64,000 nt of DNA from positions 248,001 through 312,000 of the IMG/VR virus record IMGVR_UViG_3300027759_004177. One strand, 5' to 3'. Positions 22,109 to 50,200 of the stretch are shown here, one piece after another; the stretch's first letter is position 1, and every line of letters starts with the position of its first letter. Both the position numbers and the translations under genes were made by a program. The notes under the pieces were generated by a model that saw only the letters and a list, made by a program, of their open reading frames with translations, did no database searches and was not told the DNA's origin.

Positions 22109-24511
22109 TTACGCTGTAGCGTTGAAGATTTTTTCCGAAGTGTCTCTGTGGTCTTTCATAACCGAAATCATTTGATCCAATCGTTCAATCATTTCGTCCA
22201 TGCCGGGCAAACGACCGTTTTTGAGTGGTGCAATCACTTCGCCGGCGCCGCCTTCAGCTACTTTTACATTGACTCCGCCTGTGGTAGCTGGTACAACTGC
22301 ACCTTGTGCGGCTGCCACTTCAGCATGTATGTGTGGTCCCCAGACTTTTGCTTTCTCAGGATTGGCCGGTTCTATGCTTTCATCTAATACTTGGCTAAAT
22401 CCGCCCATACTTTTTAATTTGGCCACTACCTCAGGATATTGTTTTAGATCGTGTAGCACCAGATCAAACGCACGACCGGAACCATGAGCAACACTATCGT
22501 CTATTCCTCGATCTTTGAAACCGCTAAAATGTTTGTAATTTCCACCCAGCATAGCATGAACCTGTTGGGCCATTTGCATAATTGTTGCGTTGCCTTGTTG
22601 CTCTTCTCTGTCAAATCCTGATTTAATTTTGAGACCAGTGGCTGTTACTACCGGTTCGCTGCTGCTTTTTCCTTTGTTAAATCTCTCTCTGCGTTGATCA
22701 AATACCGATTTAGCCGGGCTTTGAAACGGTGCTGCTGGTGTACCAGCTGTAGGGCCACTGGGAGGAGGTGTTCCTGGTGTTAAACTTTTGATTGCTGCGT
22801 CTAGATCTAATTTTTTTAATGCTTTTTCTATTGTGTCTACTCCGGCTGCAGTAACTTGAGCAAATCTAGTAAGAGGCGTCAGCAAGTTCTCGCCTAGTGC
22901 AGCTTTTAGTCGATTAGTATCTTCTTCTAGTCCTTGCACAGCCTTGTCCAATGGCAACATATTGTCGGCCATTTTGTCAGCGTTTTTTCTAGCTTTTTCT
23001 GCGGCGCCTTCTTGTCGCTTGAGTTGTTCTATTCTTTCCTGATTTGCAAATGTAGCAATGTCACTGTATTGGCCAGTCAATCTAGCAGCTCGAACAATAG
23101 CTTCAAATATGCCTGGATTGTCTCTTGCATATTTCAATGATTGCTCACTGAGTTTGGCAGTTTCAAGGTTAGATTCCTGGAGAGTTTTACTACTGTCCCC
23201 TATCATGCTTATCTGTTGATTTATTTGTTCCTTTAACCTTGGATTGTTAGCCAACGCCAAATTGAATGCAGTATCAGTAGATGCTCCAGCTGAGTACATT
23301 TCCATGAAGCCTTTTTTGTACACTTCGGGCATAGTAGCCAATTGGTCTCGCAATTTTTTGTAACCCTCGGCGCCACCTTCTCTTTCTGCCTTGGCTAGCA
23401 CGTCCACTTCTAGTGCCTGGGTTTGTGCTTTTTCCATGGCCTTTTTGGCATCTTGACCTGTGATGTCTGAAATTATACGCAGTTCTTTACCATACTGCAT
23501 AGTAATTTCTGCAATCTGACGATCACTCAAGGCTCTGCGATCTCCGGCAGCGTTTTGGCGTGCCATGACCTGTGCGGCCAATTCGGCCTGTTCTTCGGCA
23601 CTATAACCTAGATTACGCAGTTGTATGCCCAGCTGGCTGTTACGCAACTCTCGGCTGATCCCGCCAATTCTACGAGTAGCTTCGCCGAGCCCCAGACCCA
23701 TATTGACAAAATCTTCTCTGGCATTTTTTACCACTGTGGCCAGCTGGGCAATGTCCAGGCCAGCTCTGGCAGCTTCTTGTCGCATTTCGGTCATGCCACC
23801 AGCAAAAATTGCACCTGCACCAGTTATGTCTTTGAACCCGGCTTGCGTTTTCTTGAGTTCGTCACCCAAAAACTCTACACCGTCCTTGATTTTTTCCGCA
23901 CTCTTGCCAACCAGAAATTCGCCCAACTTGCCAAGGCCAGTTATTATCAATCCAATTGCTCGACCCCACGGTCCCATCAGTGCAACAATAAGCCCAGCTG
24001 ATTCAGCTACCCCGCCCAATGCTTTGCTGGCAGCCACACCAGCATCAATTGTTTTTAAACTGGCTTTGGTTGCTGCTTCAACCCCCGACGCACCCGATTG
24101 CAGACTTTTTGCAAAATCTCGTGTGCCTTCGTAGATGGTCTGTGCCAGTGATCCAATTCCCACACCCAAATTAGACAAGCCGGCACTGACGTTTTTTGTT
24201 ATTGCTGTTTTCTTTAAATCTGCCTTGCTTGATTCAAGTTCGTCTACACGTTCAGCGTTACGAGATTTTTTTGCTTCCTTGATGGCACGATTTAACTCGT
24301 CCATCTCTCTGACCACGTTTTGAATAGGTTGCTTGGTGCCATCTAAGAAATCGCCAAATCCTTTGAGTACCGGTTGCTGTCGTTTGAGATTGTCAGTAAA
24401 TGCTTTGATGTGTTTCTGAAAGTCTTCAACGTTTTTTGGATCAAAGGTGGCCTTGTTGCCAGTCAACTGCTCGACTTTTTCTAGAAACTCTTCTGCGGTC
24501 ATGTTAGCCAT
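22109..24511 (-). CDS. Tape-measure/hub-like protein with C-terminal LAS (M15-like) metallopeptidase domain
   Basis: 800 aa, helical A/E/K/Q-rich with hydrophobic GxxG stretch; HGSGRAFD (HxxxxxxD) and HIH zinc motifs; VAEGG.GEVIAPL tail. Confidence 0.65.
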   Translation of the reverse strand: MANMTAEEFLEKVEQLTGNKATFDPKNVEDFQKHIKAFTDNLKRQQPVLKGFGDFLDGTKQPIQNVVREMDELNRAIKEAKKSRNAERVDELESSKADLKKTAITKNVSAGLSNLGVGIGSLAQTIYEGTRDFAKSLQSGASGVEAATKASLKTIDAGVAASKALGGVAESAGLIVALMGPWGRAIGLIITGLGKLGEFLVGKSAEKIKDGVEFLGDELKKTQAGFKDITGAGAIFAGGMTEMRQEAARAGLDIAQLATVVKNAREDFVNMGLGLGEATRRIGGISRELRNSQLGIQLRNLGYSAEEQAELAAQVMARQNAAGDRRALSDRQIAEITMQYGKELRIISDITGQDAKKAMEKAQTQALEVDVLAKAEREGGAEGYKKLRDQLATMPEVYKKGFMEMYSAGASTDTAFNLALANNPRLKEQINQQISMIGDSSKTLQESNLETAKLSEQSLKYARDNPGIFEAIVRAARLTGQYSDIATFANQERIEQLKRQEGAAEKARKNADKMADNMLPLDKAVQGLEEDTNRLKAALGENLLTPLTRFAQVTAAGVDTIEKALKKLDLDAAIKSLTPGTPPPSGPTAGTPAAPFQSPAKSVFDQRRERFNKGKSSSEPVVTATGLKIKSGFDREEQQGNATIMQMAQQVHAMLGGNYKHFSGFKDRGIDDSVAHGSGRAFDLVLHDLKQYPEVVAKLKSMGGFSQVLDESIEPANPEKAKVWGPHIHAEVAAAQGAVVPATTGGVNVKVAEGGAGEVIAPLKNGRLPGMDEMIERLDQMISVMKDHRDTSEKIFNATA

Positions 24512-24586: not shown

Positions 24587-25438
24587 ATGGAAAATGCTAT
24601 TCAAAACCCCCTAGTCAAGTACTTTAGACAGCCGTCAATCTACTTAAAATTGCCATCAAACGGTCAATATTGGAAAGAAGGGGCAGTAAATTTACCAGTA
24701 ACTGGGGAAATTCCTGTGTACCCAATGACTGCCAGGGACGAAGTTACTTTGCGTACTCCTGATGCACTCATGAACGGAGCTGGCGTTGTTGACGTAATAC
24801 ACAGTTGTTGCCCCAATATCACAGATGCTTGGAGTATGCCCAGCGTGGATGTGGATGCTGTGTTGATCGCTATCAGGATTGCCAGTTACGGTGCAGAAAT
24901 GCCAGTTGATACCAGTTGCCCCAATTGCGGTGCAGAAAACACCCACAATGTCGATTTGAGTGTGAGACTATCGGGAATCACTTGTCCAGACTACAACAAA
25001 AAAATCAGTTTACCCGATGAGTTGCATGTAAAATGCACGCCGCAGGCATATTTCAGTGTTAATAGAAAAAATACCATATCGTTTGAAGAACAACGGCTAG
25101 TACAGGCCCTAGAACAAACTGATGAAAACTCAGAACAACGCATGTCACAAATTGCCGACAGCATGACCCGATTGATACAGATCAGCATAGACACAGTAAC
25201 AGACAGCACCGAGTACATTGAAATGCCCGACGGAACCCGTGTTACAGATAAAGAATTTATCAAAGAGTTTTATAGCAATGCTAATGGCAGCGTTGTACGT
25301 AACGTACAAGAACAACTGGCTGAAATCAACAACCAAGGCGCCGTCAAGGATCAATCAGCTGAGTGCAACGAGTGTAAAACTGAATATAAAATTCCTATCA
25401 TGTTTGACTACGCAAATTTTTTCGCAATCGGCTCCTGA
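24587..25438 (+). CDS. Baseplate hub/tail assembly chaperone (T4 gp26-like)
   Basis: YLKLPSNG..., PMTARDE..L, D.DAVLIAIRIASYG, two CxxC pairs (CPNC, CNEC), C-terminal NFF. Confidence 0.7.
   Translation: MENAIQNPLVKYFRQPSIYLKLPSNGQYWKEGAVNLPVTGEIPVYPMTARDEVTLRTPDALMNGAGVVDVIHSCCPNITDAWSMPSVDVDAVLIAIRIASYGAEMPVDTSCPNCGAENTHNVDLSVRLSGITCPDYNKKISLPDELHVKCTPQAYFSVNRKNTISFEEQRLVQALEQTDENSEQRMSQIADSMTRLIQISIDTVTDSTEYIEMPDGTRVTDKEFIKEFYSNANGSVVRNVQEQLAEINNQGAVKDQSAECNECKTEYKIPIMFDYANFFAIGS
25414..25423 (+). promoter_or_regulatory. Putative -1 ribosomal frameshift slippery site (A AAT TTT TTC)
   Basis: Overlapping X XXY YYZ heptamers in frame near the stop; the -1 frame opens after TGA at 25405-25407 and runs to 25653. 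Confidence 0.65.
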
Positions 25439-25653
25439 CATTAGACAATGACGCCGTCGTAAAACTGTTGGAATCTTACGATAAAGAGTCGAGAGCCGTT
25501 AAAAAAGAAGCGTTGCAAATGGCCTGGTACATGCGAGGTGGGTTGACCTATAACGATGCTATGGCACTGAGCTCATCAGAACGAGAGATAATTGGTGAAA
25601 TAATTAAAAAGAACATGGAAACTACAGAGAAATCGGGATTACCATTCTTCTAA
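25417..25653 (+). CDS. gp51-like chaperone extension, probably translated by -1 frameshift from the upstream gene
   Basis: Track ORF 25468-25653 has only a TTG start and no SD; frame is open back to 25408; WYMRGG.TY..AM.LS..ER motif. Confidence 0.6.
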   Translation, partial: FFRNRLLTLDNDAVVKLLESYDKESRAVKKEALQMAWYMRGGLTYNDAMALSSSEREIIGEIIKKNMETTEKSGLPFF

Positions 25654-25661
25654 CTGATTTA

Positions 25662-25712
25662 AGATTAGCTACGCTAATCTATTGATTTCGCTTTGCTCAT
25701 CAATGTTTTTCT
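25662..25712 (+). terminator. Twin hairpins plus T-tract (terminator for + transcript; possibly ssDNA hairpins)
   Basis: AGATTAGC-TAC-GCTAATCT and ATTGAT...ATCAAT followed by GTTTTTCTT. Confidence 0.5.
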
Positions 25713-25719
25713 TCTTTGT

Positions 25720-26123
25720 TGCTTTTCCGTATTATCCAGATTAATTGGTCACAATTCACCGTATGCACGGTGAACATGATTGAGCATTATCCGAGTAGCA
25801 CAGTCATTTATTATAAAGAGATTGTATTTACATACGCAGAGGCGGTTGACCGGTACCCCTTACTCTAGCTTCACATATCAACGGAACCCTAGTGACCCGA
25901 TAATAAATCCAAGTCCTATAAGCTGGGGTTGTATCTTTTTCACATAGCCCCGACCATTTTTTGCCTTAAGTTAGCATTTGCCTTGCACACCCGAGCAACA
26001 TCTAGACTGGGTATCTCACCAGTCCGCAACGGGAGTCGAGCTGCCTCGACCAAACAGAGTGCGAATTCCATAATAAGAGTATAACTTTGTGTTTATTGCA
26101 GAATGACTTTGAGTCGAGTGTGC
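25720..26123 (-). ncRNA. Candidate large structured ncRNA downstream of the GIY-YIG gene
   Basis: ORF-free 470-nt gap with many stems; most wobble pairs and a GUAA tetraloop favour the minus strand; two candidate pseudoknots. Confidence 0.6.
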
Positions 26124-26551
26124 TAAATCTTGTTGATAATGTGTGAGCCATGTACACGGACTTGTATGTGTCCGTTATAATAATCGTTACTTTCTAAAAC
26201 TCTGCGAGCAAATTGTTCTCTTGCTTCTATATAGCTGCATTCAGATTTACTTTTGCAGTAGTATAGTATTTCTCTACTGAAATTGTCAACACCCAATGCA
26301 ATCACATCTTTTGTTAATTCTGGACTGGAACCATAGTATGTTTGCCAGTCTGAATCAATTTTACCACGAATCTTCTTGCGTTTCTTCTTACCATTTTTTA
26401 GTTTGACCATTCGGTAAGTGGTCTTGCTAAATTTTGCAAGTTTTTTGCCAATATACTTTCGGCCGGTTAGGTTATTTGTTATCAAATAAACAAAACCAAC
26501 ACAATCTTCGGGTAGCGTTTCTACTTGAGTATTTTCGTGAATCCATGACAT
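26123..26551 (-). CDS. Short stand-alone GIY-YIG (Seg-like) endonuclease
   Basis: GFVYLITNNLTGRKYIGKK, W..YYGSS, F.REIL, E.REQF, YYN; K/R-rich insert KLKNGKKKRKKIRGK. Confidence 0.88.
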   Translation of the reverse strand: MSWIHENTQVETLPEDCVGFVYLITNNLTGRKYIGKKLAKFSKTTYRMVKLKNGKKKRKKIRGKIDSDWQTYYGSSPELTKDVIALGVDNFSREILYYCKSKSECSYIEAREQFARRVLESNDYYNGHIQVRVHGSHIINKI

Positions 26552-38117: not shown

Positions 38118-41100
38118 ATGGCACAAACCACACGTCAAACCAACCTCTTAGTACAGCAAGACTGGACCAAGATCTATCAAACGTTTACCAACGCTGATTT
38201 CACCAGCTATGATTTTGAGACCTTGCGTAACAGCATGATCACCTATCTCAAAACCTACTACCCTGAAACATTCAATGATTTCTTAGAAAGCTCAGAGTAT
38301 CTGGCCTTGATCGACATGATTGCGTTTCTTGGGCAGAGTCTAGCGTTCCGTGCAGACTTGAATGCTCGTGAAAATTTTATTGACACAGCACAGCGTCGTG
38401 ACAGTATTTTAAAACTGGCTCGTATGCTCAGTTACAATCCACAACGCAATACTGGCGCCAGTGGCCTGCTCAAGTTTGAAAGTGTGCGTACCACAGAATT
38501 TCTCACAGACAGTTCGGGCATTAATCTAAGCAACGCCACCATACACTGGAATGATCTTACCAACGAAAACTGGCTGGAACAGTTTACTACTATTCTCAAC
38601 GCGGCCCTGGTCAGTAGCCAAGCAGTGGGCAAGCCTGGCAACAGTCAATACCTTAATAATATCAAAACAGACGAATATACAATTAACCTAAACACCAACA
38701 CCTTGCCTGTTGCTCCATTTACCACAACCATACAAGGCAGTAGTGTGGCATTTGAAGCAGTAAGTGCCACCAGTCTGGGACAGAGTTATCTATACGAACG
38801 TGACCCAACCAGTAGTGGTGCGTTTAACGTTTTGTATCGTAACGACAACAATGGTAACGGTAGCAACAACACCGGTTTCTTTTTGTATTTCAAACAGGGC
38901 AAATTAAATTCTACAGAATTTAACATCACCAATGCCATTCCCAATAACTTTGTCACGGTGGCCACCAACAACATCAACAACACAGATGCTTGGTTATACA
39001 GTTTGGATGTCAACAGAAATGTCAGCGAAAAATGGACCAAAGTTCCAGCCTTGAACGGCATCAATGTTATCTACAATCAATTAACAGAAAAAAATCTTTA
39101 CCAAATCAACACTCGCACCAATGACCAAGTGGATGTGGTGTTTGGTGATGGCAGTTTCAGTAACATACCACAAGGCAGTTTCCGTTTTTATTATCGCACC
39201 GGTAATGGTATCACCTACAGCATTACTCCTGACGACATGGCCAGTGTCAGTGTGGCCTTTAGCTATATCAGCAAACAAAACAGAGTTGAAACGCTGACTA
39301 TCACAGCCAGCTTGAATTATACTGTGACCAATGCCAATGCAGCACCAAGCCTGAGCAGCATCAAGGCCAGTGCTCCGCAACAGTACTACACACAAAATCG
39401 TATGATCACAGCAGAAGACTACAACATCTTCCCACAGACCAACTACGGTAGTATTCAAAAGATCAAAGCAGTTAATCGTACCAGCTCAGGTGTGAGTTTA
39501 TACCTTGACGCACTGGACCCAACTGGCAGTTTCTCCAGCACAAATATCTTTGGCGACGATGGCACAATATCAGCCAACAACAAAATAGGTTCAACACAGT
39601 TTGATTTCTTAACCGATAACGACATTTATTCGGCTGTGTACAATGTGATCATACCAACAATCAACAGCACAGAAGTTAGAAACTACTACTATGGTAATAC
39701 TAGTGTATTTCCAAGATTCAGTGGCAACACCAACACAGTCTCGGGCGGCAATATCAAGTTTAATCAAAACACAGTAAGCACAGGAACCAGTACAGGGTTC
39801 TTGGCCAATTTGGTCAGTAACGTAACTCTACAGGTAGGCGCCAATGTTAGTCATTATCTACGTTATGTTGATACAGGTGCTGTGTTGCAATTCAGTGCAC
39901 CAACCGGATATAGATTCAACAGCGAACATCAGCTACAGTTAGGTAATACCTTGACCAACGCCGGCGACACATTGAATTTTTATGCTGTGGTCACAGACAT
40001 TGTGGCCGATTCGGACCCAACTGTGCCAAACAGAATTACACTTGGCACAGTGGTACCGTCAGGTGCAATTTTAAGTAATGTGAGCTTGGCTGGTGCCGAA
40101 GCTATAGTGCCAGCTTACAAAAACGATTTGAGTACCAGCTTAATTACTACCATAATCACACAAATCAAAGCCTTGTTAAACTTTGGTTTAAAATACAATA
40201 CAACAGTTAGAGTACAATACGAGGATGGCTCATACGGACCTTATGGTGTATGGGAAAATATTACACCAGCCAACATCGGTTCAAGCACAGACTGGATATT
40301 GAAATTTACCTATAATCAAGGCCTATACACAATTAACTATAGAAATCTCGAATACACTTTTGCCAGTGCGGGCAATACCAAGTTTTATTTTGATCCATCA
40401 GTGCGTGTGTACAACTCTGTTATTGGCACCAACGTCAAAGACACTATTAAAATTTTAAAAATTAATACCAAACCTAATGCTACAGCAACATTAGACAATG
40501 ACATAGTATGGCAAATTTATAACACTATCACAGCCACCGATGGATATGTGGATAAAACCAAAGTGTTGGTACAGGTACCGACTACACAGGCTGAAGCTAT
40601 TCCTGACAATCCAGATCTGTACCTTCAAGTTGCTGCCGGCTCTGCAGATAGGGATAGTCTATATTTCCAATATCGTCATAATGTTCCTGGACGTAGCCGT
40701 ATCAATCCAACCCCAGTAAACATCGTTGACGTTTATGTGTTGACATCAACTTATGCTATAGATTATGCAAATTATCTCAAAGATCTCACTGGCACCATCG
40801 CAGAACCAGAATTGCCAACCAGTACCAGCTTAGAAACAGCATATAGTGATTTGGATAATTATAAAGCAGTGAGTGATACGCTAATTTATAATCCAGCAAA
40901 GTTTAAACCCTTGTTCGGGGCCAAGGCCGATGTCAGTCTACGTGCCCGATTCCAGGTAGTAAAAAATCCAGCGGCCAACGTGACAGACAACGAAATTAAG
41001 AGTCAAGTTATTACTGCGGTAAACAAATATTTTGACGTGAGCAACTGGGATTTTGGGGAAACATTTTATTTCAGTGAATTGGCTGCATACTTGCATTCAA

Positions 41101-41294
41101 CATTGACACCTAACATATCAAGTGTGTTGATTGTGCCAGCAAGTAATAATTTGGTGTTTGGTAACTACTTCCAAATCAACGCCGAACCATGGGAAATTAT
41201 TACCAGTGCCGCCACAGTCAATGATGTTGAAATAATTTCAGCTATCACAGCCGCTCAATTGAATTTGGGCAATACATTAGTCGGAACATATTAA
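38118..41294 (+). CDS. gp6: Baseplate wedge subunit gp6-like (baseplate J family)
   Basis: DFETLR..M..YL, DF.ESSE..ALID..A, ENFIDTAQRR.S...LA..L.Y.P, V.FGDG.F..IP.G, IK..AP..YYTQNRM.T.EDY; late promoter GATAAATA 38090-38097. Confidence 0.85.
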   Translation: MAQTTRQTNLLVQQDWTKIYQTFTNADFTSYDFETLRNSMITYLKTYYPETFNDFLESSEYLALIDMIAFLGQSLAFRADLNARENFIDTAQRRDSILKLARMLSYNPQRNTGASGLLKFESVRTTEFLTDSSGINLSNATIHWNDLTNENWLEQFTTILNAALVSSQAVGKPGNSQYLNNIKTDEYTINLNTNTLPVAPFTTTIQGSSVAFEAVSATSLGQSYLYERDPTSSGAFNVLYRNDNNGNGSNNTGFFLYFKQGKLNSTEFNITNAIPNNFVTVATNNINNTDAWLYSLDVNRNVSEKWTKVPALNGINVIYNQLTEKNLYQINTRTNDQVDVVFGDGSFSNIPQGSFRFYYRTGNGITYSITPDDMASVSVAFSYISKQNRVETLTITASLNYTVTNANAAPSLSSIKASAPQQYYTQNRMITAEDYNIFPQTNYGSIQKIKAVNRTSSGVSLYLDALDPTGSFSSTNIFGDDGTISANNKIGSTQFDFLTDNDIYSAVYNVIIPTINSTEVRNYYYGNTSVFPRFSGNTNTVSGGNIKFNQNTVSTGTSTGFLANLVSNVTLQVGANVSHYLRYVDTGAVLQFSAPTGYRFNSEHQLQLGNTLTNAGDTLNFYAVVTDIVADSDPTVPNRITLGTVVPSGAILSNVSLAGAEAIVPAYKNDLSTSLITTIITQIKALLNFGLKYNTTVRVQYEDGSYGPYGVWENITPANIGSSTDWILKFTYNQGLYTINYRNLEYTFASAGNTKFYFDPSVRVYNSVIGTNVKDTIKILKINTKPNATATLDNDIVWQIYNTITATDGYVDKTKVLVQVPTTQAEAIPDNPDLYLQVAAGSADRDSLYFQYRHNVPGRSRINPTPVNIVDVYVLTSTYAIDYANYLKDLTGTIAEPELPTSTSLETAYSDLDNYKAVSDTLIYNPAKFKPLFGAKADVSLRARFQVVKNPAANVTDNEIKSQVITAVNKYFDVSNWDFGETFYFSELAAYLHSTLTPNISSVLIVPASNNLVFGNYFQINAEPWEIITSAATVNDVEIISAITAAQLNLGNTLVGTY

Positions 41295-44200
41295 TGGCCA
41301 TAGTCAACACAATTAATTTTTTACCAAGGATATTCCGTACACCAACCAATCAACGATTCCTTGGTGCCACCATGGACCACTTAACGTCCGACGCAATCAA
41401 CACACCTGTCAACGGATACATAGGTCGAACATTTGCTCCTACCTACAAACCAGGAGACAATTATGTACCTGAATCAACCGATCTACGAAAAAACTATCAA
41501 TTGGAACCCAGTGCTGTAGTAACTGACAGCAACGGTGAAATAACATTTAACACTGGTTACATTGATCTATTACAAAACATAAAAAATTATGGCGGCCTAA
41601 CAGACAATCAGCAACGCTTGTTTGGTAGCGAAATGTACAGCTGGGACGGACATTTTGATTACGATAAATTTGTAAACTATTACAATTATTATTGGTTACC
41701 CGATGGGCCAGACTTTGTGCCAATTTATGGAAATCAAGCGCCTTATACTGCTGATTACACAGTAGTGCGAAACGGTGCCGTTGGTGGATACACATTTACC
41801 GGCAAGGGATATCAGCCCAATACTCAACTGACTTTGGTTCGTGGCGGAGTCTACACATTTACTATCAATCAACCCGGTCATGACTTTTGGATACAACGTA
41901 GCCCCGGTGTCAACGGCATTGATCCCAATATTCCCACGGTAAGTACCCGAGATGTATACGGTGTTACCAACAATGGCGCCAGCACTGGCACAGTAACTTT
42001 CCGTGTACCTCTGTACAACGCACAAGATTTTTATATCTTGATGCCAATCAAGTCCAGCGTTGATGCGGCAACCACACTCAAATACATCGACATACAAAAT
42101 CGTTTATTAAGTAATTTCCTAAACCAGTACCCAGATGGTATTGATGGTATTAATAATCAGCTACAAAACAAAACTTTAATATTCATTGGCAACGACGAGG
42201 ACGATACCAATTGGACCACCCCTGCAGTCAGCCCAGCATACACCAGCTTAGATGTGGCCAGCATCCGTCCCGGAGACATTATCAATGATGCCACTCGAGT
42301 TAAAACTTGGAAAATTAATTTGGTTGCTGTTGATAGTGCTGCTACAGATTTTATTATACAACTATCCCCGGAAACCACAATTCTAGCAAGAGAAAAAGTT
42401 TTTATAAGCTCAGGTAAAACCTATGCTTCACAAAAGTTTTGGCTCAACGATAATCTAGCATACAATGTAGAACCAGCAATTACCGCAAACACAGATCGCC
42501 TATACTATCAAGACAGTAGCAATCCGGGGTTTGTTGGCGAAATACGCATAATAAACAACACGTCAGACACAATCGAAGTTGACACAGAAATTGTTGGTCG
42601 GGTTGGATATACCAGTCCCAATGGTGTGGTGTTTACCAATGGATTAAAGATTCAATTTGACAGTTTAGTCACTCCAGCGTCATACTATAAATTTGAGTAT
42701 GTCAATTACTCAACTTGGCTAACAGCACTCAATGACATGGGTGCTACAGTAACTGGTACCAGTGGCGGTGCAGTGGCGTATAAAGATGAGCAATTGGTTG
42801 GTGAGTGGAACGGAACCACCGGATATAGAATTAGAGAATGGTATGTAGAAGGCGTGGGCACAGCAATTAATTTAGTGCCTGTTGGACAAACAACAGTACC
42901 TGAGGCCTACGGATATCTACTGGATACTACTCCGGACTATATCACAATCAATCGTGGCAGCCGAGATAGAAATCCCTGGGCACGTAGCAATCGTTGGTTC
43001 CACAAAGATGTGATTGCCGCCACCGCTGACTACAATAACACCACTGAAAATTACGGACTCAACTTGCCTGGTCGCAGACCTATCATTGAGTTTGACTCAG
43101 ACCTACAACTTTTTAATTTTGGCCGTCAAGCAAAAAATAGTGTAGATCTAGTGACTTTTGAGGAAACAGATGCATTTGGTATAACTATACCGGCTACTCG
43201 AGTTGAAGGACAAATCACTGCTGTAGTGGATGGTATTACTTTGGCGCCCGGCCACAGAGTTGTATTTGCCAATGACTATGATCTCAATGTTAAAAATAAA
43301 ATATGGGAGGTAACTGTAATTGAAGGACTGGGTGGACAAAATTACATCAACTTGATCGCCACCGATGACAATCCAGTGCTGGCTGGAGAAAATGTTTTGG
43401 TCACCGAAGGCGACAACGCAGGAAAAACTTATTATTTTGATGGTGAAGATTGGTTTGTATCACAATCTAAATCCAGCATAAATCAGATGCCTTTGTTTGA
43501 TCTAGTAGATGCCGACGGATATAGTTTCAGTGACACAACTGTTTATCCAGGATCTACTTTTGCGGGCAACAAGATTTTTAACTACAATGTTGGTACTGGA
43601 AACAACGATACAATCTTGGGATTTCCTTTAAGCTATCAAAATTTCAACAACATCGGTGACATTGTATTTAAAAGTCACTATAATACAGATTCGTTTACTT
43701 ACACATCAGATACCAATACCGGAGCAACTCAAGCCATTGCTTGTAGCACAGGTTATTTAATTAAAAACACCAATTTAACCACACAAGAAAAATTAAATTC
43801 CTGGGTACCGGGTGCTGAAGACAGTAGCCAATATCAGTTGTTTACCAAATTCTTTGATGGGCGAGTGCTTGACATCAATGGAGTCAACAGAGCATTCGTA
43901 CAAGTTGACGTTTTGCCCGCAACAACAGATACTATACCGCACCTCAAAGTCTATAAAAATAATATGCTGTTAACAGCAACAGTTGACTATGAGTTAACCA
44001 CATATGGTATGTACAATATCGTAATCTTTTTATCTGATCCAGCCGTGGGAGACAAACTTGATGTTGCAATTTTTAGCGACACAGCAAGTAAACTGGCACC
44101 ATATGAAGTTCCAAAAAATCTGATTCAAAATCCTCTCAACGAGAATTTTTCAACCATTGCTTTGGGGCAAATTAGAACACACTACAATAAACTGTTAGAA

Positions 44201-47200
44201 AACACATCAGTCAGCAACAGACCTATCCAGGACACGTACTTAAAACAGCAAAACGGAACACTGAATCAACACTCTGCGCCGTTGGTCTATGCAATGACAT
44301 TCTTAAACGATCCAATGCTTAATTTTGTCAATGGTATTGATTTGGCCAAAAAAGAATATAGCAGATTTAAAAATAAATTTATAAGTTTGTGCTCAACCCT
44401 ATCTGGTCTAAACTACAATGACCCTGTTACAGGTGTAGATACAATACTACAAAATATCAACTCGGTTAAAAATTCTAGCTTTCCTTGGTACTATTCAGAC
44501 ATGGTGCCACAAGGCGGAAATTACACAACAATAACTTACACCGTATTAAATGAGCGTCAGACCAACTATGAAATTGGCAATATTTTTAATCCCGTTGAAT
44601 TAAGCAATCGTGCTGTGTTAATCTGGCACAATGGCGTACAGCTGACCTTGGGCAAGGATTATGAATTTAGTCCCACAGTACCAGCAGTAATTTTTTCAAT
44701 CTCATTTGCGATCAACGACACCATTGTCATCAGAGATTACTTTGACACAGACGGAAGTTTTGTTCCCGAAACTCCAAGTAAACTAGGTCTGTATCCCAAA
44801 TCAGAGCCTTTGATTTATCAAGATACAACATATCAGACTCCTGTAAATGTGATTAGAGGACACGACGGATCGGTAATGCCAGCATTTGGCGACTTCCGCG
44901 ACAACTACATACTGGAACTTGAAAAGCGTATCTACAACAACATCAAGGCAGACTATACCAAAAATATTATCAATTTATATGATATTGTTCCTGGACGCTT
45001 TAGAACAACCGAGTACACACGAGATGAGTTCGTACAAATTCTATCTCGCAACTTTTTACAATGGTCCGGTACAAACAATGTGGACTATACCACCAACAGT
45101 TGGTATGATGCCAACAATTCCTGGACCTGGAACTATGAAAAGTTTACAGACACAGTAGATGACAAACCCTTGCAAGGCAGTTGGAGAGCAATTTATAACT
45201 ATTGGTATGATACCGATCAACCCAATAGAGCACCATGGGAAATGTTGGGATTTGGATTTGAACCTGCATGGTGGGAGACTCGGTATGGTCCAGCACCGTA
45301 TACTCGAGGTAACTTTACTCTTTGGGAAGATTTAGAAGCTGGTTATGTTTGGAACAACGGAGACCCCTACACTGACACTCGTTTTGCCCGTCCGGGGCTG
45401 ACTGACTTTATTCCTGTAGACAGCGCCGGAAATTTATTACCACCAACTGACATCAACATAGTCAAACAATATAACCTAACTGCCGGCGGCAACAATTATG
45501 TCATTGGACAAGAAGGTCCTGTAGAAACAGCGTGGATACGCAGCAGTGACTATCCGTTTGCCGTACAAATGGCCATAGCCATGGCCAAACCTGCCAGTTA
45601 TTTTGGAACACAGTATGATACATCGAGATTCTATGTCAGCGAAATCACGGGTCAATTTAGTAGTGCCACCAATGAAAAAATTAACCCTGCCGATTTAAAA
45701 ATCAACGGAGACACACGCACTGGGGCTGTCCAACGCACCAGTGGATACATTAACTGGATTGCTGATGTTATTAAAAACGTTGGCATAGATCCAGTTGAAA
45801 AAATTTCCAGTTATTTAGAAAATTTAAGTGTTAAGCTAAATTACAAAGTTGGCGGATTCACTGACAAAAATATTCTAACAGTCACAGCAGAACAAACTAC
45901 CCCAGGTGCCAAACGTGCTGGAGTTATCATACCTGACAGCAATTATAATGTATATCTGAATAAATCAATACCTGTGTCTGTAGTTACCTATAGTGCAGTA
46001 ATAGTGCAACGTACCAATGTTGGATATAGCGTGGTCGGATACAATACCAATGATCCATTCTTTACAATTTTGCCCAGTGTCGCTAATAACAAAGCAGAGA
46101 CAATCACGGTGGGCGATGTCAGCGCCAAACTGTATCAAGACACCACAAATCGCACAATATCAGTGCCATATGGTACAACCTACAGTAACATACAACAATT
46201 AAGTGACTTCTTGATCAGTTATGAACGATATCTCGAAAGTGTTGGATTTGTATTTGATCAATTTGACAAAGATTTGCAAGAAGTAAAAAACTTCAGGACC
46301 AGTGTCAAAGAATTTTTATACTGGAGTCAACAGGGCTGGGAAGTAGGTACCATACTGGTGCTAAATCCAACAACAGATCGACTGCTATTAAAAACATCCG
46401 GCACAGTGGTAGACGAAATAACCAATACACTAAACTCAGGACGCATATTGGATCAAAATTTCTTGCCTATCAAGAGTGGAAATTTTAACATTGTAAGAAC
46501 TGAAAATTTTGCATTTGGCAACCAATTTGGTATAACCACACTCAACGGAACAGGTATATGTTTTGCCAGTCTAAATCTGGTTCAATTTGAACATGTGTTG
46601 GTATTTGACAACGAAAGTGACTTTGGTGACATTATCTATGTGCCATCGCAAGGAGTAAGACAGTATCGATTAAGTTTGTCAGGAGCCAAGACCGGAGCCT
46701 GGACCGGCGCATTAAGTGCCAGTGGATACATGTACAATACTACAAATGTCAGTGGATGGACTGCTGGCACAGACTATCAAGTAGGCGACATTGTTACTTT
46801 TAATAATAACTATTATACTGCACTTGATTCTATACCAGCAACTACAAAATTCAATGTGGCAGACTGGGCACAAATTCAAGAATCTGATTTAAAAACTGGA
46901 CTATTACCAAGCCTTGGTCTGTTAGCACAACAGTCAGAAAACATTTATAACGTTGATCGACCACCAGACAACGAAACATTGCAGTTATTCAGTGCAGGCT
47001 TAATTGGATTCCGTCCAAGAGACTATTTAACTGATTTGGGCATTGGTACCGCAACACAAACAAAATTCTACCAGGGTCTTATCAAAGAAAAAGGCACATT
47101 AAATTCTATCACTGCCTTGACCAAGGGTAACTTTGACAACGTATCAGGTAACATCGCAATTTTTGAAGAGTGGGGATTCAAAGTTGGCGACTACGGCGAC

Positions 47201-50200
47201 TTAGATGGCAATCAGTTTAAAGAATTCGTGCTAGACCAATCAGTTTTCAACACCAACCCTGTGGCATTTACTCTGGGTAACACATACTCTGCTGGCAACA
47301 TAATTGTTAATTTGCAGGCCAATGCCAATTTGACCATATCAAACGTGTACAATTCTAGCAATTTGTCCAACACCAGTACCGCAATATACAGCAACAGAGA
47401 TAAAAGTTTTTACATCAACGATTTGCCTACCGCAGGATATGTGCATGTTGATGATACAGATTTAACAATTTTTAACATCAATGAATACAATCAAAATCCT
47501 GATGTGGGTATTGGTAGTAAAATTTGGACAGCCAAAGACACCGGCAATAATTGGAACGTATATCGTGTAACAGAAACCGACATTTCTGCCACAACACTGA
47601 CCTATGTTTTAGATGATTATGCACAGTTATTGTTCACAGACAAACACTCATTCCAGGTTGGAGATCTATTAGTATTAAAAGGATTCCAGGTCGCCTATTT
47701 TGATAACTCTATTTTAGAAAATTTCAGTACCAACTATGATAACATTTATAAAATAGTTGATGTTGTTAATCAATTAACAGTTACAGTACAACTAAAAGAC
47801 ATCGCCGCATTGTCCAACTTGATTGCGACCAGCCCAGTCGTCAGCGAAGCGGCAGTTTATAAATTAGTATCGTCTAAAGTGCCAACTGTGACAGCGATTG
47901 ACGGTCTTTTACCATTGCACGGATGGATTGATAACGACAGGATCTGGGTTGACACAGCTACCACTGATGCAGGATGGGGAGTCTATACGTTCAATCAGGC
48001 CTGGCCCAACACAGCCTCGGGTAATTTGACAGCCAATACAGTGACAGCCAATGATAGATTTGGTAGCCAAGTGACTATCAGCACCACCGGCAAATATTTT
48101 TATTCTAGTAATCCTGCACAAAAACAAGTGCAAGTGTTTGCTAATGTTGCTGGCAACTATAGTGCTAACATTACAATCTCCAACTCCGAAGCAAAATTTG
48201 GAAGCGTGTTAGAATCTCAAGGTAACTTGCTAGCCGTGGCTGCTGCAGGTAATGTTTATGTGTATAGACAAAACGACAGCACCACCGCCAACACCATGGC
48301 CATTCCGTGGGTACCCAACGCTTTCCCAACACTGGGAACAGCCTGGACAGCCAATACTGTAATTGCTATCAACACCCAAATTAGCAACGGATCAAACACC
48401 TATATAACAACAGGCAATGTGTATGGTGCCACGTTTGCCAATATTATATCAAATACACGGGCAGTAAGTTTTATTCCTGTTAATTCCATTATTTCTTATC
48501 AGAGTAATATCTATGTTACCACTGCCAACGTTTGTCCGGCCAACGTATTTTTACCAACCACAGCAGAAAAATTTGCTGCAATTACTTCTAATATTCAATT
48601 GATCAACGTCTTGGCTGGTAATGTTCAATTGTTGCAGACCATTACCACAGGCAACATGTCCGGTAATATTTCTAGTGTGTCAATGAGTGCAGACATGAAA
48701 CAGATATACATTGGCGGAAACGATCGTGTTGAAGCCTATACTACTACCAATGGCGCCTGGGCCAACATCAAATATACCTGGGCCAATGCTGTTACAGGCG
48801 TTGGTGCGTTTGGCAATGTGGTCAAAACCAATACCAATGGTACTCGTTTATTAATTGGTGCGCCAAATGCCACAAACACATATGATCAAAATGGTAATGT
48901 GTATTATTACACAGTTAACCTAACAACCAATGCTATCGCATTGACACAGACACTGAGTAGCGAATATAAGAATCAAGGCGCACAGTTTGGATACCAAATT
49001 GGAACAGACAGCACGGCCGCTAATGTGTTTATTGGTGCTCCTGGGTCACTGGGCACTGATAAGTTCTATGGCGTAGTAGAACATTGGACACATGACGGAA
49101 ATGTTTATGTTCGTGCTGGAAATGTGTCTCGACCAAGAGACCAATCGGGTGCATTTGGCACCACTGTCAGCGTCAGTTCAGATGCAAAATTTGTGGCGGT
49201 AGGTAGCCGTGGTAGCGCCAGCGAAGAAACAACTGTGTTTGACAATTCCGACACAGTGATCGACAACAATTCTACAAAATTTATTGATTCTATTGTGGCC
49301 AGTGGTAGTGTTTACGTATTTGAGTCATTGATGAATCAGTCCAATATCGCTGATGTTGTGTATTCGTTTACACAAGAATTAGAAACCGGCAGATATGCAC
49401 AATTGGAAAGTGGCGACAACTTTGGAGCTGCTGTTGCGGTTGCTCCGGGATTGTTATTGGCCAGTGCACCTGAATCAGATTTGGCATCGGGCGTAGTGTA
49501 TACATTTAACAATTTAACAAATACACCGTCTTGGCAGTTGACAAGAAGTCAATTGCCTCAAGTTGACATTGACAGCATTAACAGATCATTTATATACAAC
49601 AAATCAAATAATAATTTAATTGCACCATTGGACATTGTTGATCCGGCCAAAGGTAAAATTTTAGGCGGTGTGGCCAGCGACATTGATTATCGATTGGATC
49701 ATGATCCTGCCACGTACAATGCTGGCACACAAAACACATATCAAGATTACCATTGGGGGCCTGCACAAGTTGGTCGCATATGGTGGAATCTTGACAACCT
49801 ACGATATACAAATTACGAACAAGATTCTTTGATTTATAGATTAAATCACTGGGGCGATCGTTTTCCTGAAAGTAAAGTAGAAATTTACGAATGGATAGAA
49901 AGTTCTGTATTACCTAGCGAATTTGTTGCCGGCGGAGAATCTGGCGTACCCTTATACGCAGACGACTCAGCTTACAGCACATATGGATACGTAGATCAGT
50001 CTGGTGCAGTACGTGTCAAGTATTACTTTTGGGTAGCTCTTAGAGATCAAGCCAACACTCGTGCTGGCAAACAAAACAGCGTTGTTGCTATTACCGCAGC
50101 AATTGAAAATCCACAAAATCAAAATATACCGTACGCTACAGTTTTGCGTAACGACACAATAGCTTTATATAATGTTAAAAATCTATTGGTAGGAAAAAAC

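What the first reader, a model, noticed from the sequence alone, without database searches (positions are those of the whole stretch)
25400..25653. Programmed -1 frameshift fusing gp26-like and gp51-like ORFs (lambda G/GT-like)
The gp26-like gene ends GCA AAT TTT TTC GCA ATC GGC TCC TGA, with overlapping slippery heptamers A AAT TTT and T TTT TTC. The -1 frame is closed by TGA at 25405 just upstream, then stays open about 80 codons (…FFRNRLLTLDNDAVVKLLESYDKE…GLPFF) and has no good start or SD. The pair is adjacent to the tape-measure-like gene. This mirrors lambda G/GT and P2 E/E+E' tail chaperones and suggests the same mechanism in a T4-like jumbo phage.
Basis: partly seen in the sequence, partly recalled or inferred. 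Interest (0 to 1): 0.65.

Follow-up and report, generated by a model that had tools for sequence, protein, structure and literature searches.

The report
Frameshift site in jumbo-phage gp26 gene
A baseplate-hub assembly gene of a 357-kb jumbo phage almost certainly makes a short and a long protein from one gene by a programmed -1 ribosomal frameshift, and the same unreported signal sits in every relative examined (188 distinct sequences, including well-known cultured coliphages).

Summary
The gp26-like gene (24587-25438, PF12322) ends with T_TTT_TTC (25417-23) in phase. The -1 frame is closed at 25405-07 and then stays open to 25653, with no usable start.

Comparative evidence strongly supports a programmed -1 ribosomal frameshift.
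- All 188 unique orthologous junctions carry exactly TTTTTTC in the same phase, with the downstream ORF always at -1. These include 121Q, phAPEC6, RaK2, CBB, BF, PA5oct and Atu_ph07.
- The codon before the heptamer varies (7 amino acids) but always ends in T.
- An invariant Arg codon follows the heptamer, upstream of any candidate start.
- No start codon is conserved.
- At least three lineages have natural in-frame fusions. They lack the heptamer, their junction aligns gaplessly with the predicted product, and they carry a second unfused paralog.
- A stem whose 5' arm starts 3-6 nt downstream covaries and switches 3' partners between clades.

The products would be 283 aa and 355 aa; the 76-residue extension is a confidently folded helical domain.

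- The extension is not gp51-like.
- A_AAT_TTT is not conserved.
- The gene is not a homologue of lambda G/GT chaperones, although the logic is the same.
- The tape-measure identity of the neighbour is unverified.

No prior report was found, and there is no direct experimental evidence.

The parts
24587..25438 (+). Zero-frame gp26-like gene (283 aa), the short product
   Evidence: ORF list. Pfam PF12322 T4_baseplate, E 1.1e-18, 68 bits against a 24.5-bit cut-off. PHROG 150 'baseplate hub'. Single copy in the 357-kb genome.
25405..25407 (+). TGA that closes the -1 frame 3 codons upstream of the heptamer
   Evidence: In 85 of 124 relatives the -1 frame is closed 0-3 codons upstream of the heptamer, so -1 reading cannot come from further upstream.
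25417..25423 (+). Slippery heptamer T_TTT_TTC (zero-frame codons AAT|TTT|TTC = N277 F278 F279), the proposed site of tandem -1 slippage of two tRNA-Phe
   Evidence: Exactly TTTTTTC, in phase, in 124/124 and then 188/188 unique junctions. The preceding codon varies (AAT, AGT, ACT, GCT, CGT, CAT, GAT) but always ends in T, and only 2/154 FF dipeptides elsewhere have this form. It is absent from all in-frame fusions.
25414..25420 (+). Second overlapping heptamer A_AAT_TTT (not conserved, probably incidental)
   Evidence: Present in only 47/124 junctions. A slip here would give the same protein.
25424..25428 (+). 5-nt spacer between heptamer and stem
   Evidence: The family-wide spacer is 3-6 nt.
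25429..25439 (+). 5' arm of the candidate stimulatory stem (CGGCUCCUGAC); contains the zero-frame stop
   Evidence: Folds. Covariation. Duplex statistics. Independent switches.
25488..25498 (+). 3' arm of the candidate stimulatory stem (GUCGAGAGCCG)
   Evidence: Same as the 5' arm. Pairs 30-92 (C-G 41 / U-A 39) and 33-89 (G-C 61 / A-U 42) of alignment A3. For the window alone: local fold -19.1 kcal/mol, z -1.55.
25436..25438 (+). Zero-frame stop (TGA), 4 codons after the heptamer
   Evidence: In relatives the stop lies 1, 4 or 6 codons after the heptamer, the stop type varies and the tail sequence is variable.
25423..25653 (+). -1-frame extension: 76 codons (RNRLL...GLPFF) plus TAA. The trans-frame product is residues 1-279 plus these 76 = 355 aa.
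   Evidence: Translation. Conserved from the first codon: F1 F2 R3 W37 R40 G41 are invariant, and R5 L6 L7 are at least 90% conserved in 103 sequences. AlphaFold pLDDT 92.9, all-helical. The domain occurs as the C-terminal domain of natural PF12322 fusions.
25662..25680 (+). Terminator-like hairpin just after the extension ORF (end of the two-frame unit)
   Evidence: Consensus scan only.
22109..24511 (-). Divergent 800-aa neighbour (context): candidate tape-measure-like virion protein, identity unverified
   Evidence: No Pfam or PHROG family. No BLASTP similarity to T4 gp29 or to the 121Q neighbour. The proteins at this position in CBB, phAPEC6 and PA5oct are virion proteins by MS, and the one in RaK2 was annotated as similar to a tape measure.

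Best explanation
This is a programmed -1 ribosomal frameshift.

Proposed mechanism:
- Ribosomes translating the gp26-like gene reach T_TTT_TTC (25417-25423) with tRNA-Phe on TTT (P site) and on TTC (A site).
- A fraction slip back one base, so that both tRNAs re-pair with TTT.
- Translation then continues in the -1 frame with CGC (Arg) through 76 more codons to TAA at 25651.

Two proteins result. One is the 283-aa zero-frame protein, which ends 4 codons after the site. The other is a 355-aa protein that carries an extra, independently folding helical C-terminal domain.

A stem starting 5 nt downstream (25429-39 paired with 25488-98) probably pauses the ribosome over the heptamer.

Function is inferred. 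The gp26 family acts in baseplate-hub assembly; T4 gp26 is listed as a hub assembly chaperone, and the relatives are not found in virions. Both isoforms appear to be needed, in a ratio set by frameshift efficiency, as for lambda G/GT.

Shown: the sequence anatomy and its conservation. Inferred: the slip itself, its efficiency, the role of the stem and the function of the long form.
For: 1. Phase and heptamer. 162/162 complete loci have the small ORF in the -1 phase. TTTTTTC is in phase in 124/124 and then 188/188 unique junctions, although gp26 identity falls to 22%. Cultured phages 121Q, phAPEC6, CBB, XbC2, BF, RaK2, PA5oct, Vibrio 2.275.O, Atu_ph07 and Phosso all have it, and Xoo-sp13 has T_TTT_TTT.
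2. Nucleotide-level selection. The codon before the site encodes 7 different amino acids but always ends in T. Elsewhere in the same genes FF is written T|TTT|TTC in only 2/154 cases.
3. The -1 frame is read from the heptamer onward. Arg (CGN) immediately after the site is invariant, and RxRLL is at least 90% conserved. The overlapping zero-frame tails vary in sequence, length and stop codon.
4. There is no conserved start. 58/124 junctions have no ATG, GTG or TTG before codon +8, and 85/124 have no start with an SD in the first 45 codons. Annotators' and gene callers' starts scatter over profile positions 1-39, and the ORF is unannotated in RaK2 and PA5oct.
5. Natural in-frame fusions exist. 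About 20 cluster representatives and loci L176-L184 are PF12322 plus this domain in one ORF. Their junction (DLDYCNNF-RNQIL) aligns without a gap to the predicted product (MFDYANFF-RNRLL), and none has the heptamer.
6. All 5 fusion loci with enough flank also carry an unfused paralog in tandem, whereas the window's genome has one copy.
7. Downstream stem. Covariation is 0.234 against 0.151 for shuffled and slid controls (0/500). Parsimony gives about 14 and about 17 switches between Watson-Crick states. Per-sequence duplexes average -16.9 against -11.3 kcal/mol for codon-shuffled controls (mean z -2.65), the spacer is 3-6 nt, and different clades use different 3' arms.
8. The extension folds well alone (pLDDT 92.9) and within a natural fusion (pLDDT 90.3, pTM 0.84).
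Against: - No direct evidence exists: no junction peptide, reporter assay or ribosome profiling.
- For the window alone the stem is only modestly better than chance (z -1.55, 17/200 shuffles; duplex 8/100).
- RNAalifold finds no single consensus across all 121 sequences.
- Atu_ph07, Phosso and 121Q have an ATG overlapping or near the stop that could support coupled initiation.
- 53/124 junctions have TTG at codon +6.
- One clade has AGGAGG-N8-ATG at codon 34, so an additional internally initiated short peptide cannot be excluded there.
- The sequences are phylogenetically related, so the counts are not independent events.
Confidence: 0.85

Rival explanations
1. Independent translation. The small ORF is a separate gene that is initiated on its own, either by termination-reinitiation coupling at the gp26 stop or from a non-canonical or TTG start. 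Its ~60-75-aa product then associates non-covalently with gp26.
For: ATGA or TAATG overlaps occur in Atu_ph07, Phosso, 121Q and XbC2. TTG sits at codon +6 in 53/124 junctions. The -1 phase is what an ATGA overlap gives. Annotators call it a separate CDS.
Against: 58/124 junctions, including the window, have no canonical start before codon +8. In the window the codon at the ATG position is AAT and codon +6 is CTG. There is no SD. The invariant Arg and the conserved RxRLL lie upstream of every candidate start. Coupling does not explain the invariant T at the wobble of a variable preceding codon or the invariant TTT. Natural fusions join the two parts at exactly this point.
Confidence: 0.07
2. 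Transcriptional slippage. RNA polymerase inserts one extra U in the U6 run, giving an mRNA subpopulation in which the two ORFs are in frame. The resulting protein would be identical (…NFFRNRLL…).
For: A homopolymeric T6 run is present and the product would be indistinguishable at the protein level. This was not testable here because no reads could be obtained.
Against: The run is exactly six T in 188/188 junctions: never preceded by T and always followed by C. Known bacterial slippage sites use runs of about 8-9 or more (my own knowledge, not tested). Under slippage, longer runs would be favoured and should appear in some lineage. The X_XXY_YYZ pattern with a conserved stem 3-6 nt downstream is the signature of ribosomal frameshifting, not of polymerase slippage.
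Confidence: 0.05
3. No functional fusion. The heptamer simply reflects a conserved C-terminal xFF motif of gp26, and the downstream ORF is a decaying or unrelated remnant.
For: FF is conserved at the C-terminus of PF12322 proteins, and T4 gp26 also ends ...EFFELL. One unfused paralog (L177) ends TCT TTT TTC with a -1 frame that closes after one more codon.
Against: The downstream ORF has a constant length (78-79 codons in 123/124 junctions), is under clear protein-level conservation and folds with pLDDT 92.9. Synonymous positions of the heptamer are invariant, against a background in which FF has this form in 2/154 cases. In-frame fusions show the FF-equivalent codons are free to vary once no shift is needed (NF, SF, QF, YF, TF).
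Confidence: 0.02

Closest known systems
Lambda G/GT (and HK97-like) tail assembly chaperone -1 frameshift
   Same: A -1 slip on an X_XXY_YYZ heptamer a few codons before the stop of the upstream ORF. It gives a short form and a C-terminally extended long form that share the N-terminus. The protein belongs to the tail-assembly class and is not detected in virions of relatives (CBB and phAPEC6 MS). It lies next to a large tape-measure-like gene. Conservation is of architecture rather than of sequence.
   Different: The protein family is different (PF12322, T4 gp26-like, with no TAC Pfam hit and no fold match). The heptamer is T_TTT_TTC rather than G_GGA_AAG (the latter from my own knowledge). 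The gene is divergent from the tape-measure-like gene rather than sitting between the tube and tape-measure genes, and it is unlinked from the annotated tape measure in Atu_ph07. The extension is only 76 aa. Binding to a tape measure or tube protein has not been shown (one search gave no verdict).
P2 E/E+E' (contractile-tail phages), -1 frameshift on a T-rich heptamer
   Same: A myovirus tail-assembly gene with a T-run slippery site (P2 uses TTTTTTG, from my own knowledge) near the end of the upstream ORF, giving two isoforms.
   Different: No sequence or fold relationship could be detected. The gene context differs, and here the host phages are jumbo T4-like phages with a T4-type hub module.
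T4 gp26 / gp26' (baseplate hub assembly protein)
   Same: Same Pfam family (PF12322). T4 gp26 is listed as a hub assembly chaperone (PMC3004832). T4 also makes two products from gene 26, the second annotated as the internal in-frame CDS 26'.
   Different: T4 gp26 (208 aa) aligns only to residues 54-122 of this protein (hhalign probability 47%). It has no slippery heptamer and no downstream -1 ORF, because gene 25 follows it. T4's second product is N-terminally truncated, not C-terminally extended.
   Same: Only that both are associated with hub assembly and sit beside gene 26 in their genomes.
   Different: No detectable similarity (hhalign probability 0.8% and 2.5%). gp51 is 249 aa and is transcribed divergently from gene 26 in T4.

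Membership tests
Canonical -1 programmed ribosomal frameshift site | X_XXY_YYZ heptamer in the zero-frame phase | tested here: met
   T_TTT_TTC at 25417-25423 in phase. Found in 188/188 unique orthologous junctions.
Canonical -1 programmed ribosomal frameshift site | -1 frame open from the heptamer into a conserved coding extension that lacks its own conserved initiation signal | tested here: met
   76-codon extension, with conservation starting at the first -1 codon. No conserved start or SD.
Canonical -1 programmed ribosomal frameshift site | Stimulatory RNA structure about 5-9 nt downstream | tested here: inconclusive
   At family level the feature is supported: covariation 0.234 against 0.151, mean z -2.65, spacer 3-6 nt, about 14-17 independent compensatory switches. 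For the window alone it is modest (z -1.55). There is no global RNAalifold consensus and no Rfam match. A pseudoknot was not examined.
Canonical -1 programmed ribosomal frameshift site | Trans-frame protein actually produced | not testable with these tools
The indirect support is that natural in-frame fusions have an identical junction.
Lambda G/GT-type tail assembly chaperones | Sequence or fold membership in the known TAC families | tested here: not met
   Pfam gives only PF12322. Foldseek and VIA searches with the fusion model found no TAC or other specific relative.
Lambda G/GT-type tail assembly chaperones | Position between the tail tube gene and the tape-measure gene, in the same orientation | tested here: not met
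   The gene is divergent from the 800-aa neighbour. It is about 15 genes from the annotated tape measure in Atu_ph07.
Lambda G/GT-type tail assembly chaperones | Short and long isoforms sharing an N-terminus through a -1 shift near the end of the upstream ORF | tested here: met
   By sequence anatomy and comparative evidence. Lineages without the shift encode the two forms as two genes.
Lambda G/GT-type tail assembly chaperones | Absent from the mature virion | tested here: inconclusive
   The gp26-like and small-ORF products are not among the MS-detected virion proteins of CBB and phAPEC6, although the large neighbour is. Absence from an MS list is weak evidence.
Lambda G/GT-type tail assembly chaperones | Binds the tape measure protein | tested here: inconclusive
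   Complex prediction gave no verdict, which is neither for nor against.
T4 gp26 family (PF12322 T4_baseplate) | Pfam match above the gathering threshold | tested here: met
   68.2 bits against a 24.5-bit cut-off, profile positions 14-219 of 219. Also above threshold for the own-genome search.
T4 gp51 family | Detectable similarity of the downstream ORF to T4 gp51 | tested here: not met
   hhalign probability 0.8% (6-sequence profile) and 2.5% (103-sequence profile).
Programmed transcriptional slippage | Long homopolymer run (about 8-9 or more) whose length is what is conserved | tested here: not met
   The run is exactly T6 and flanked by non-T in 188/188 junctions. The transcripts themselves could not be examined.

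The most novel reading that the evidence does not exclude
The gp26-like short and long pair is the functional counterpart, in T4-type jumbo myophages, of the G/GT tail-assembly chaperone system. That system has been thought to be missing from T4-like phages. Under this reading the short form acts on the hub and tape-measure complex, the helical C-terminal domain of the long form recruits a second partner, and the frameshift efficiency sets the stoichiometry. The requirement for both forms is strong enough that lineages which fused the frames re-created the short form by gene duplication. This would mean that an unrelated protein family reached the same solution to the same problem by convergent evolution.
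Probability: 0.3. Interest if true: 0.75.

Novelty: new member of a known kind. Interest (0 to 1): 0.62.

Why it matters
If true, a conserved recoding event has been overlooked in a whole supergroup of jumbo phages: more than 590 places in IMG/VR and about 94 cultured genomes, including RaK2, 121Q, PBECO4, phAPEC6, CBB, PA5oct and Atu_ph07.

- Annotation. It corrects current records, in which the extension is missing, truncated to 40 aa, or called a separate hypothetical protein from an arbitrary start.
- Principle. It extends the 'short plus frameshift-extended long assembly factor' principle from lambda and P2-type chaperones to a non-homologous family, T4 gp26, whose role in hub assembly is still unclear.
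- Natural experiment. Frameshift lineages have one gene, while fused lineages have two paralogs. This argues that both isoforms are required.
- Testability. The signal can be tested directly in E. coli and Pseudomonas phages that are already in culture.

Tried and rejected
- 'gp51-like' label: T4 gp51 against the small-domain profiles gave probability 0.8% and 2.5%. Rejected.
- Pfam and PHROGs on the small ORF: no hit.
- Foldseek (PDB and BFVD) on the small domain: nothing significant. The top viral hit is only the truncated 40-aa Atu_ph07 annotation of the same ORF.
- Foldseek PDB and VIA-wide on the natural fusion model: only generic helical-hairpin matches (Z about 8 over about 55 residues). 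No TAC or other relative.
The whole-region fold of the window gave z -0.29.
- Rfam: no match.
- An SD-like stimulator upstream of the heptamer, as in dnaX: absent in most junctions.
- 800-aa neighbour against T4 gp29 and against the 121Q neighbour: no BLASTP similarity. Its tape-measure identity is left unverified.
- Complex prediction of the neighbour (residues 1-700) with the gp26-like protein: no verdict, so it is not evidence either way.
No read-level test of expression or of U-insertion was possible, and read laying was not used.
- Literature searches found no prior description. Terms used: gp26/gp51/frameshift; jumbo phage/baseplate hub/frameshift; TTTTTTC/frameshift/phage/tail; programmed ribosomal frameshift/Rak2; PA5oct/frameshift. 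The library is incomplete, so priority is not proven.
- tblastn did not reach cyanophage or T4 gp26 genes, so whether smaller T4-like phages share the signal was not tested beyond T4 itself, which lacks it.
- The trans-frame protein of the window itself was not folded, because a -1 fusion has no reference. A natural in-frame fusion was used as a proxy.
Full report
WHAT IS THERE

The 283-aa ORF at 24587-25438 (+) is a member of Pfam PF12322 'T4_baseplate', the T4 gp26 family (E 1.1e-18), and of PHROG 150 'baseplate hub'. Its zero frame ends TAC GCA AAT TTT TTC GCA ATC GGC TCC TGA.
- T_TTT_TTC occupies 25417-25423 in X_XXY_YYZ phase, and A_AAT_TTT overlaps it at 25414-25420.
- The -1 frame has TGA at 25405-07 and then runs open for 81 codons to TAA at 25651-53.
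- The only canonical start early in that frame is TTG at 25468, with no SD. No start with an SD occurs before codon 42.
- A terminator-like hairpin follows at 25662-80.

The window is part of a 356,865-bp virus record rated complete, and it has a single PF12322 gene. Upstream and divergent lie an 800-aa ORF and then the T4-type portal; the prohead protease and the gp23 capsid gene are further on.

COMPARATIVE TEST OF THE FRAMESHIFT

- tblastn found the gp26-like gene in about 95 cultured phage genomes, all jumbo (284-595 kb).
- Profile-guided scans of IMG/VR found more than 590 places, of which I held about 240.
- In all 162 loci of the first set where both parts were complete, the small ORF lies in the -1 phase.
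- Anchoring on the junction, 124/124 unique junction sequences carry exactly TTTTTTC in phase. After pooling the later loci the count is 188/188. gp26 identity to the window ranges from 22 to 100%, with a median of 50%.
- The same holds in the cultured phages 121Q, phAPEC6, CBB, XbC2, BF, RaK2, PA5oct, Vibrio 2.275.O, Atu_ph07 and Phosso. Xoo-sp13 has the variant T_TTT_TTT.

The conservation is at the nucleotide level.
- The codon before TTT TTC is AAT, AGT, ACT, GCT, CGT, CAT or GAT, coding seven different amino acids, but it always ends in T.
- Elsewhere in the same genes only 2 of 154 FF dipeptides are written T|TTT|TTC. Phe is TTT 66% of the time.

The -1 frame is read from the heptamer onward.
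- The base after the heptamer is always G, completing CGN (Arg) in the -1 frame.
- F1 F2 R3 are invariant, and R5 L6 L7 are at least 90% conserved, in 103 sequences.
- By contrast the overlapping zero-frame tails vary (AIGS*, ASGS*, A*, V*, E*, AKGF* and others). The stop lies 1, 4 or 6 codons downstream and uses all three stop codons.
- The -1 frame is closed 0-3 codons upstream of the heptamer in 85/124 junctions.

There is no conserved initiation signal.
- 58/124 junctions have no ATG, GTG or TTG before codon +8. 53 have TTG at +6, and three have ATG at +3.
- 85/124 have no start with an SD in the first 45 codons.
- Database gene calls for this ORF begin at profile positions 1, 5, 7, 10, 17, 21, 35 or 39.
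- GenBank annotators chose four different starts in 121Q, XbC2, CBB and BF. The ORF was left unannotated in RaK2 and PA5oct and truncated to 40 aa in Atu_ph07.

NATURAL FUSIONS

A profile search of 1.84 billion representative proteins with the small domain returned 485 hits. About 20 of the top 150 are proteins of 319-351 aa that carry the domain at their C-terminus.
- All nine full-length representatives tested have PF12322 in the N-terminal part.
- Their junctions (…DLDYCNNF-RNQIL…, …DLDWSSSF-RNKIL…) align without a gap to the product predicted for a -1 slip in the window (…MFDYANFF-RNRLL…).
- At the DNA level these fusions read AAT TTT AGA, AGT TTC CGT, TAT TTT CGG, ACT TTC CGA or CAA TTT AGA. 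None has a slippery heptamer.
- Every fusion locus with enough flanking DNA (L177, L178, L179/180, L182, L184) also carries a second, unfused PF12322 paralog in tandem.
- On a tree of the N-terminal domains the frameshift architecture spans all major clades, and the fused architecture forms at least three nested groups. Deep supports are weak, so the direction of change is only suggested.

These data show three things. The domain functions as a C-terminal domain of gp26. The heptamer is needed only when the frames differ. Phages seem to need both a short and a long form.

STIMULATORY RNA

For the window alone the evidence is modest. The 80 nt after the heptamer fold into a closing stem (25429-39 with 25488-98, 5-nt spacer) enclosing two small hairpins, at -19.1 kcal/mol and z -1.55. 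RNAalifold finds no single consensus.

Across the family the 5' arm is fixed in position and the 3' arm differs between clades: GGCUCU/AGAGCC or GGCUUU/AAAGCC about 66-72 nt downstream, CGCCUCCU/AGGAGGCG at about 84 nt, and AGCUCUUAAC/GUUAAGAGCU at about 48 nt.
- For the commonest stem, the covariation score is 0.234 against 0.151 for shuffles (0/500) and at most 0.151 for slid controls.
- Two pairs show balanced double changes (C-G 41 / U-A 39, and G-C 61 / A-U 42). In both, the 5' partner is a synonymous Leu third position and the 3' partner changes an amino acid.
- Parsimony on the gp26 tree gives about 14 and about 17 switches between Watson-Crick states.
- Per sequence, the best duplex between the 17 nt starting 4 nt after the heptamer and the next 120 nt averages -16.9 kcal/mol, against -11.3 for codon-shuffled controls (mean z -2.65). 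It beats all positional controls in the same gene in 72% of sequences.

I regard a downstream stem as likely but not proven for this window.

THE PROTEINS

The extension alone folds as a helical unit (pLDDT 92.9). A natural fusion folds as one body (pLDDT 90.3, pTM 0.84), with a helix running through the junction. No solved or predicted structure gives a specific match.
- The extension is not related to T4 gp51.
- T4 gp26 aligns only with residues 54-122. In T4 gene 26 is followed by gene 25, and there is no heptamer.
- The T4 tail review lists gp26 as a hub assembly chaperone (PMC3004832).
- In the virion proteomes of CBB and phAPEC6 the large divergent neighbour is detected, but neither the gp26-like protein nor the small ORF is listed (PMC5259590 and PMC7247149).
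- RaK2's annotators noted tape-measure similarity for that neighbour.
- I could not show homology between the window's 800-aa ORF and either T4 gp29 or the 121Q neighbour. A complex prediction gave no verdict.

MECHANISM AND RIVALS

The best explanation (0.85) is tandem -1 slippage of two tRNA-Phe on T_TTT_TTC, probably aided by the downstream stem. It yields a 283-aa protein and a 355-aa protein.
- Independent or coupled initiation (0.07) is contradicted by the missing starts, the invariant Arg upstream of any start, and the nucleotide-level conservation of the heptamer.
- Transcriptional insertion of a U (0.05) would give the same protein. It is disfavoured because the run is exactly six T in 188/188 junctions and the site has the ribosomal signature.
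- A non-functional remnant (0.02) is excluded by the conservation of the ORF.

COMPARISON AND NOVELTY

The site works like lambda G/GT and P2 E/E+E'. It fails the membership tests for those families on sequence, fold and gene position. It belongs instead to the T4 gp26 family, for which I found no report of recoding in five literature searches. I file it as a new member of the known kind 'programmed -1 frameshift in a phage tail-assembly gene', in a new protein family and a new phage group.

Noticed in passing
window 38118-41294 and 41294-53866 (+): The 1058-aa ORF has an in-phase X_XXY_YYZ heptamer (TTTGGGC) 9 codons before its stop. Its -1 frame runs on into the giant 4190-aa ORF. The giant ORF has its own ATG overlapping the stop, so ordinary coupling is the default reading.
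   Followed up: no
window 26123-26551 (-): A SegE-type GIY-YIG homing endonuclease gene (PF19835, E 2e-32) lies just downstream of the gp26/extension unit, in a non-coding-looking gap of about 470 nt.
   Followed up: no
window 22109-24511 (-): The 800-aa neighbour has Gly/Ala-rich hydrophobic segments. By eye only, it also has a C-terminal motif resembling LAS/M15 metallopeptidases (S-x-H-x-x-G-x-A-x-D ... H-x-H). No Pfam or PHROG family was found.
   Followed up: partly
L036, L038, L030, L050 and relatives (one IMG/VR clade), about 84-100 nt after the heptamer: In this clade the 3' arm of the stem is AGGAGGCG, which is also an SD-like sequence 8-9 nt upstream of an in-frame ATG at codon 34 of the extension (23 sequences). 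An extra internally initiated 44-aa peptide, or SD sequestration by the stem, is possible.
   Followed up: no
L177:820-1704: The unfused paralog next to a fused gene ends TCT TTT TTC AAT GAC TAA. This is the same heptamer in phase, but the -1 frame closes after one more codon. It may be a relic of a former frameshift site or a chance match.
   Followed up: partly
L260 (PA5oct), L261 (RaK2), L001 (Atu_ph07), L259 (phAPEC6): Public annotations of the extension ORF are inconsistent. It is absent in PA5oct and RaK2, is a 40-aa fragment in Atu_ph07, and is named 'RIP and coiled-coil domain-containing 2' in phAPEC6.
   Followed up: yes
L263 (Xoo-sp13) and L260 (PA5oct): Variants of the signal occur. 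Xoo-sp13 uses T_TTT_TTT, 12 codons before the stop, with a divergent start of the extension (FFYSAIK...). PA5oct has Gln instead of the otherwise invariant Arg after FF.
   Followed up: partly
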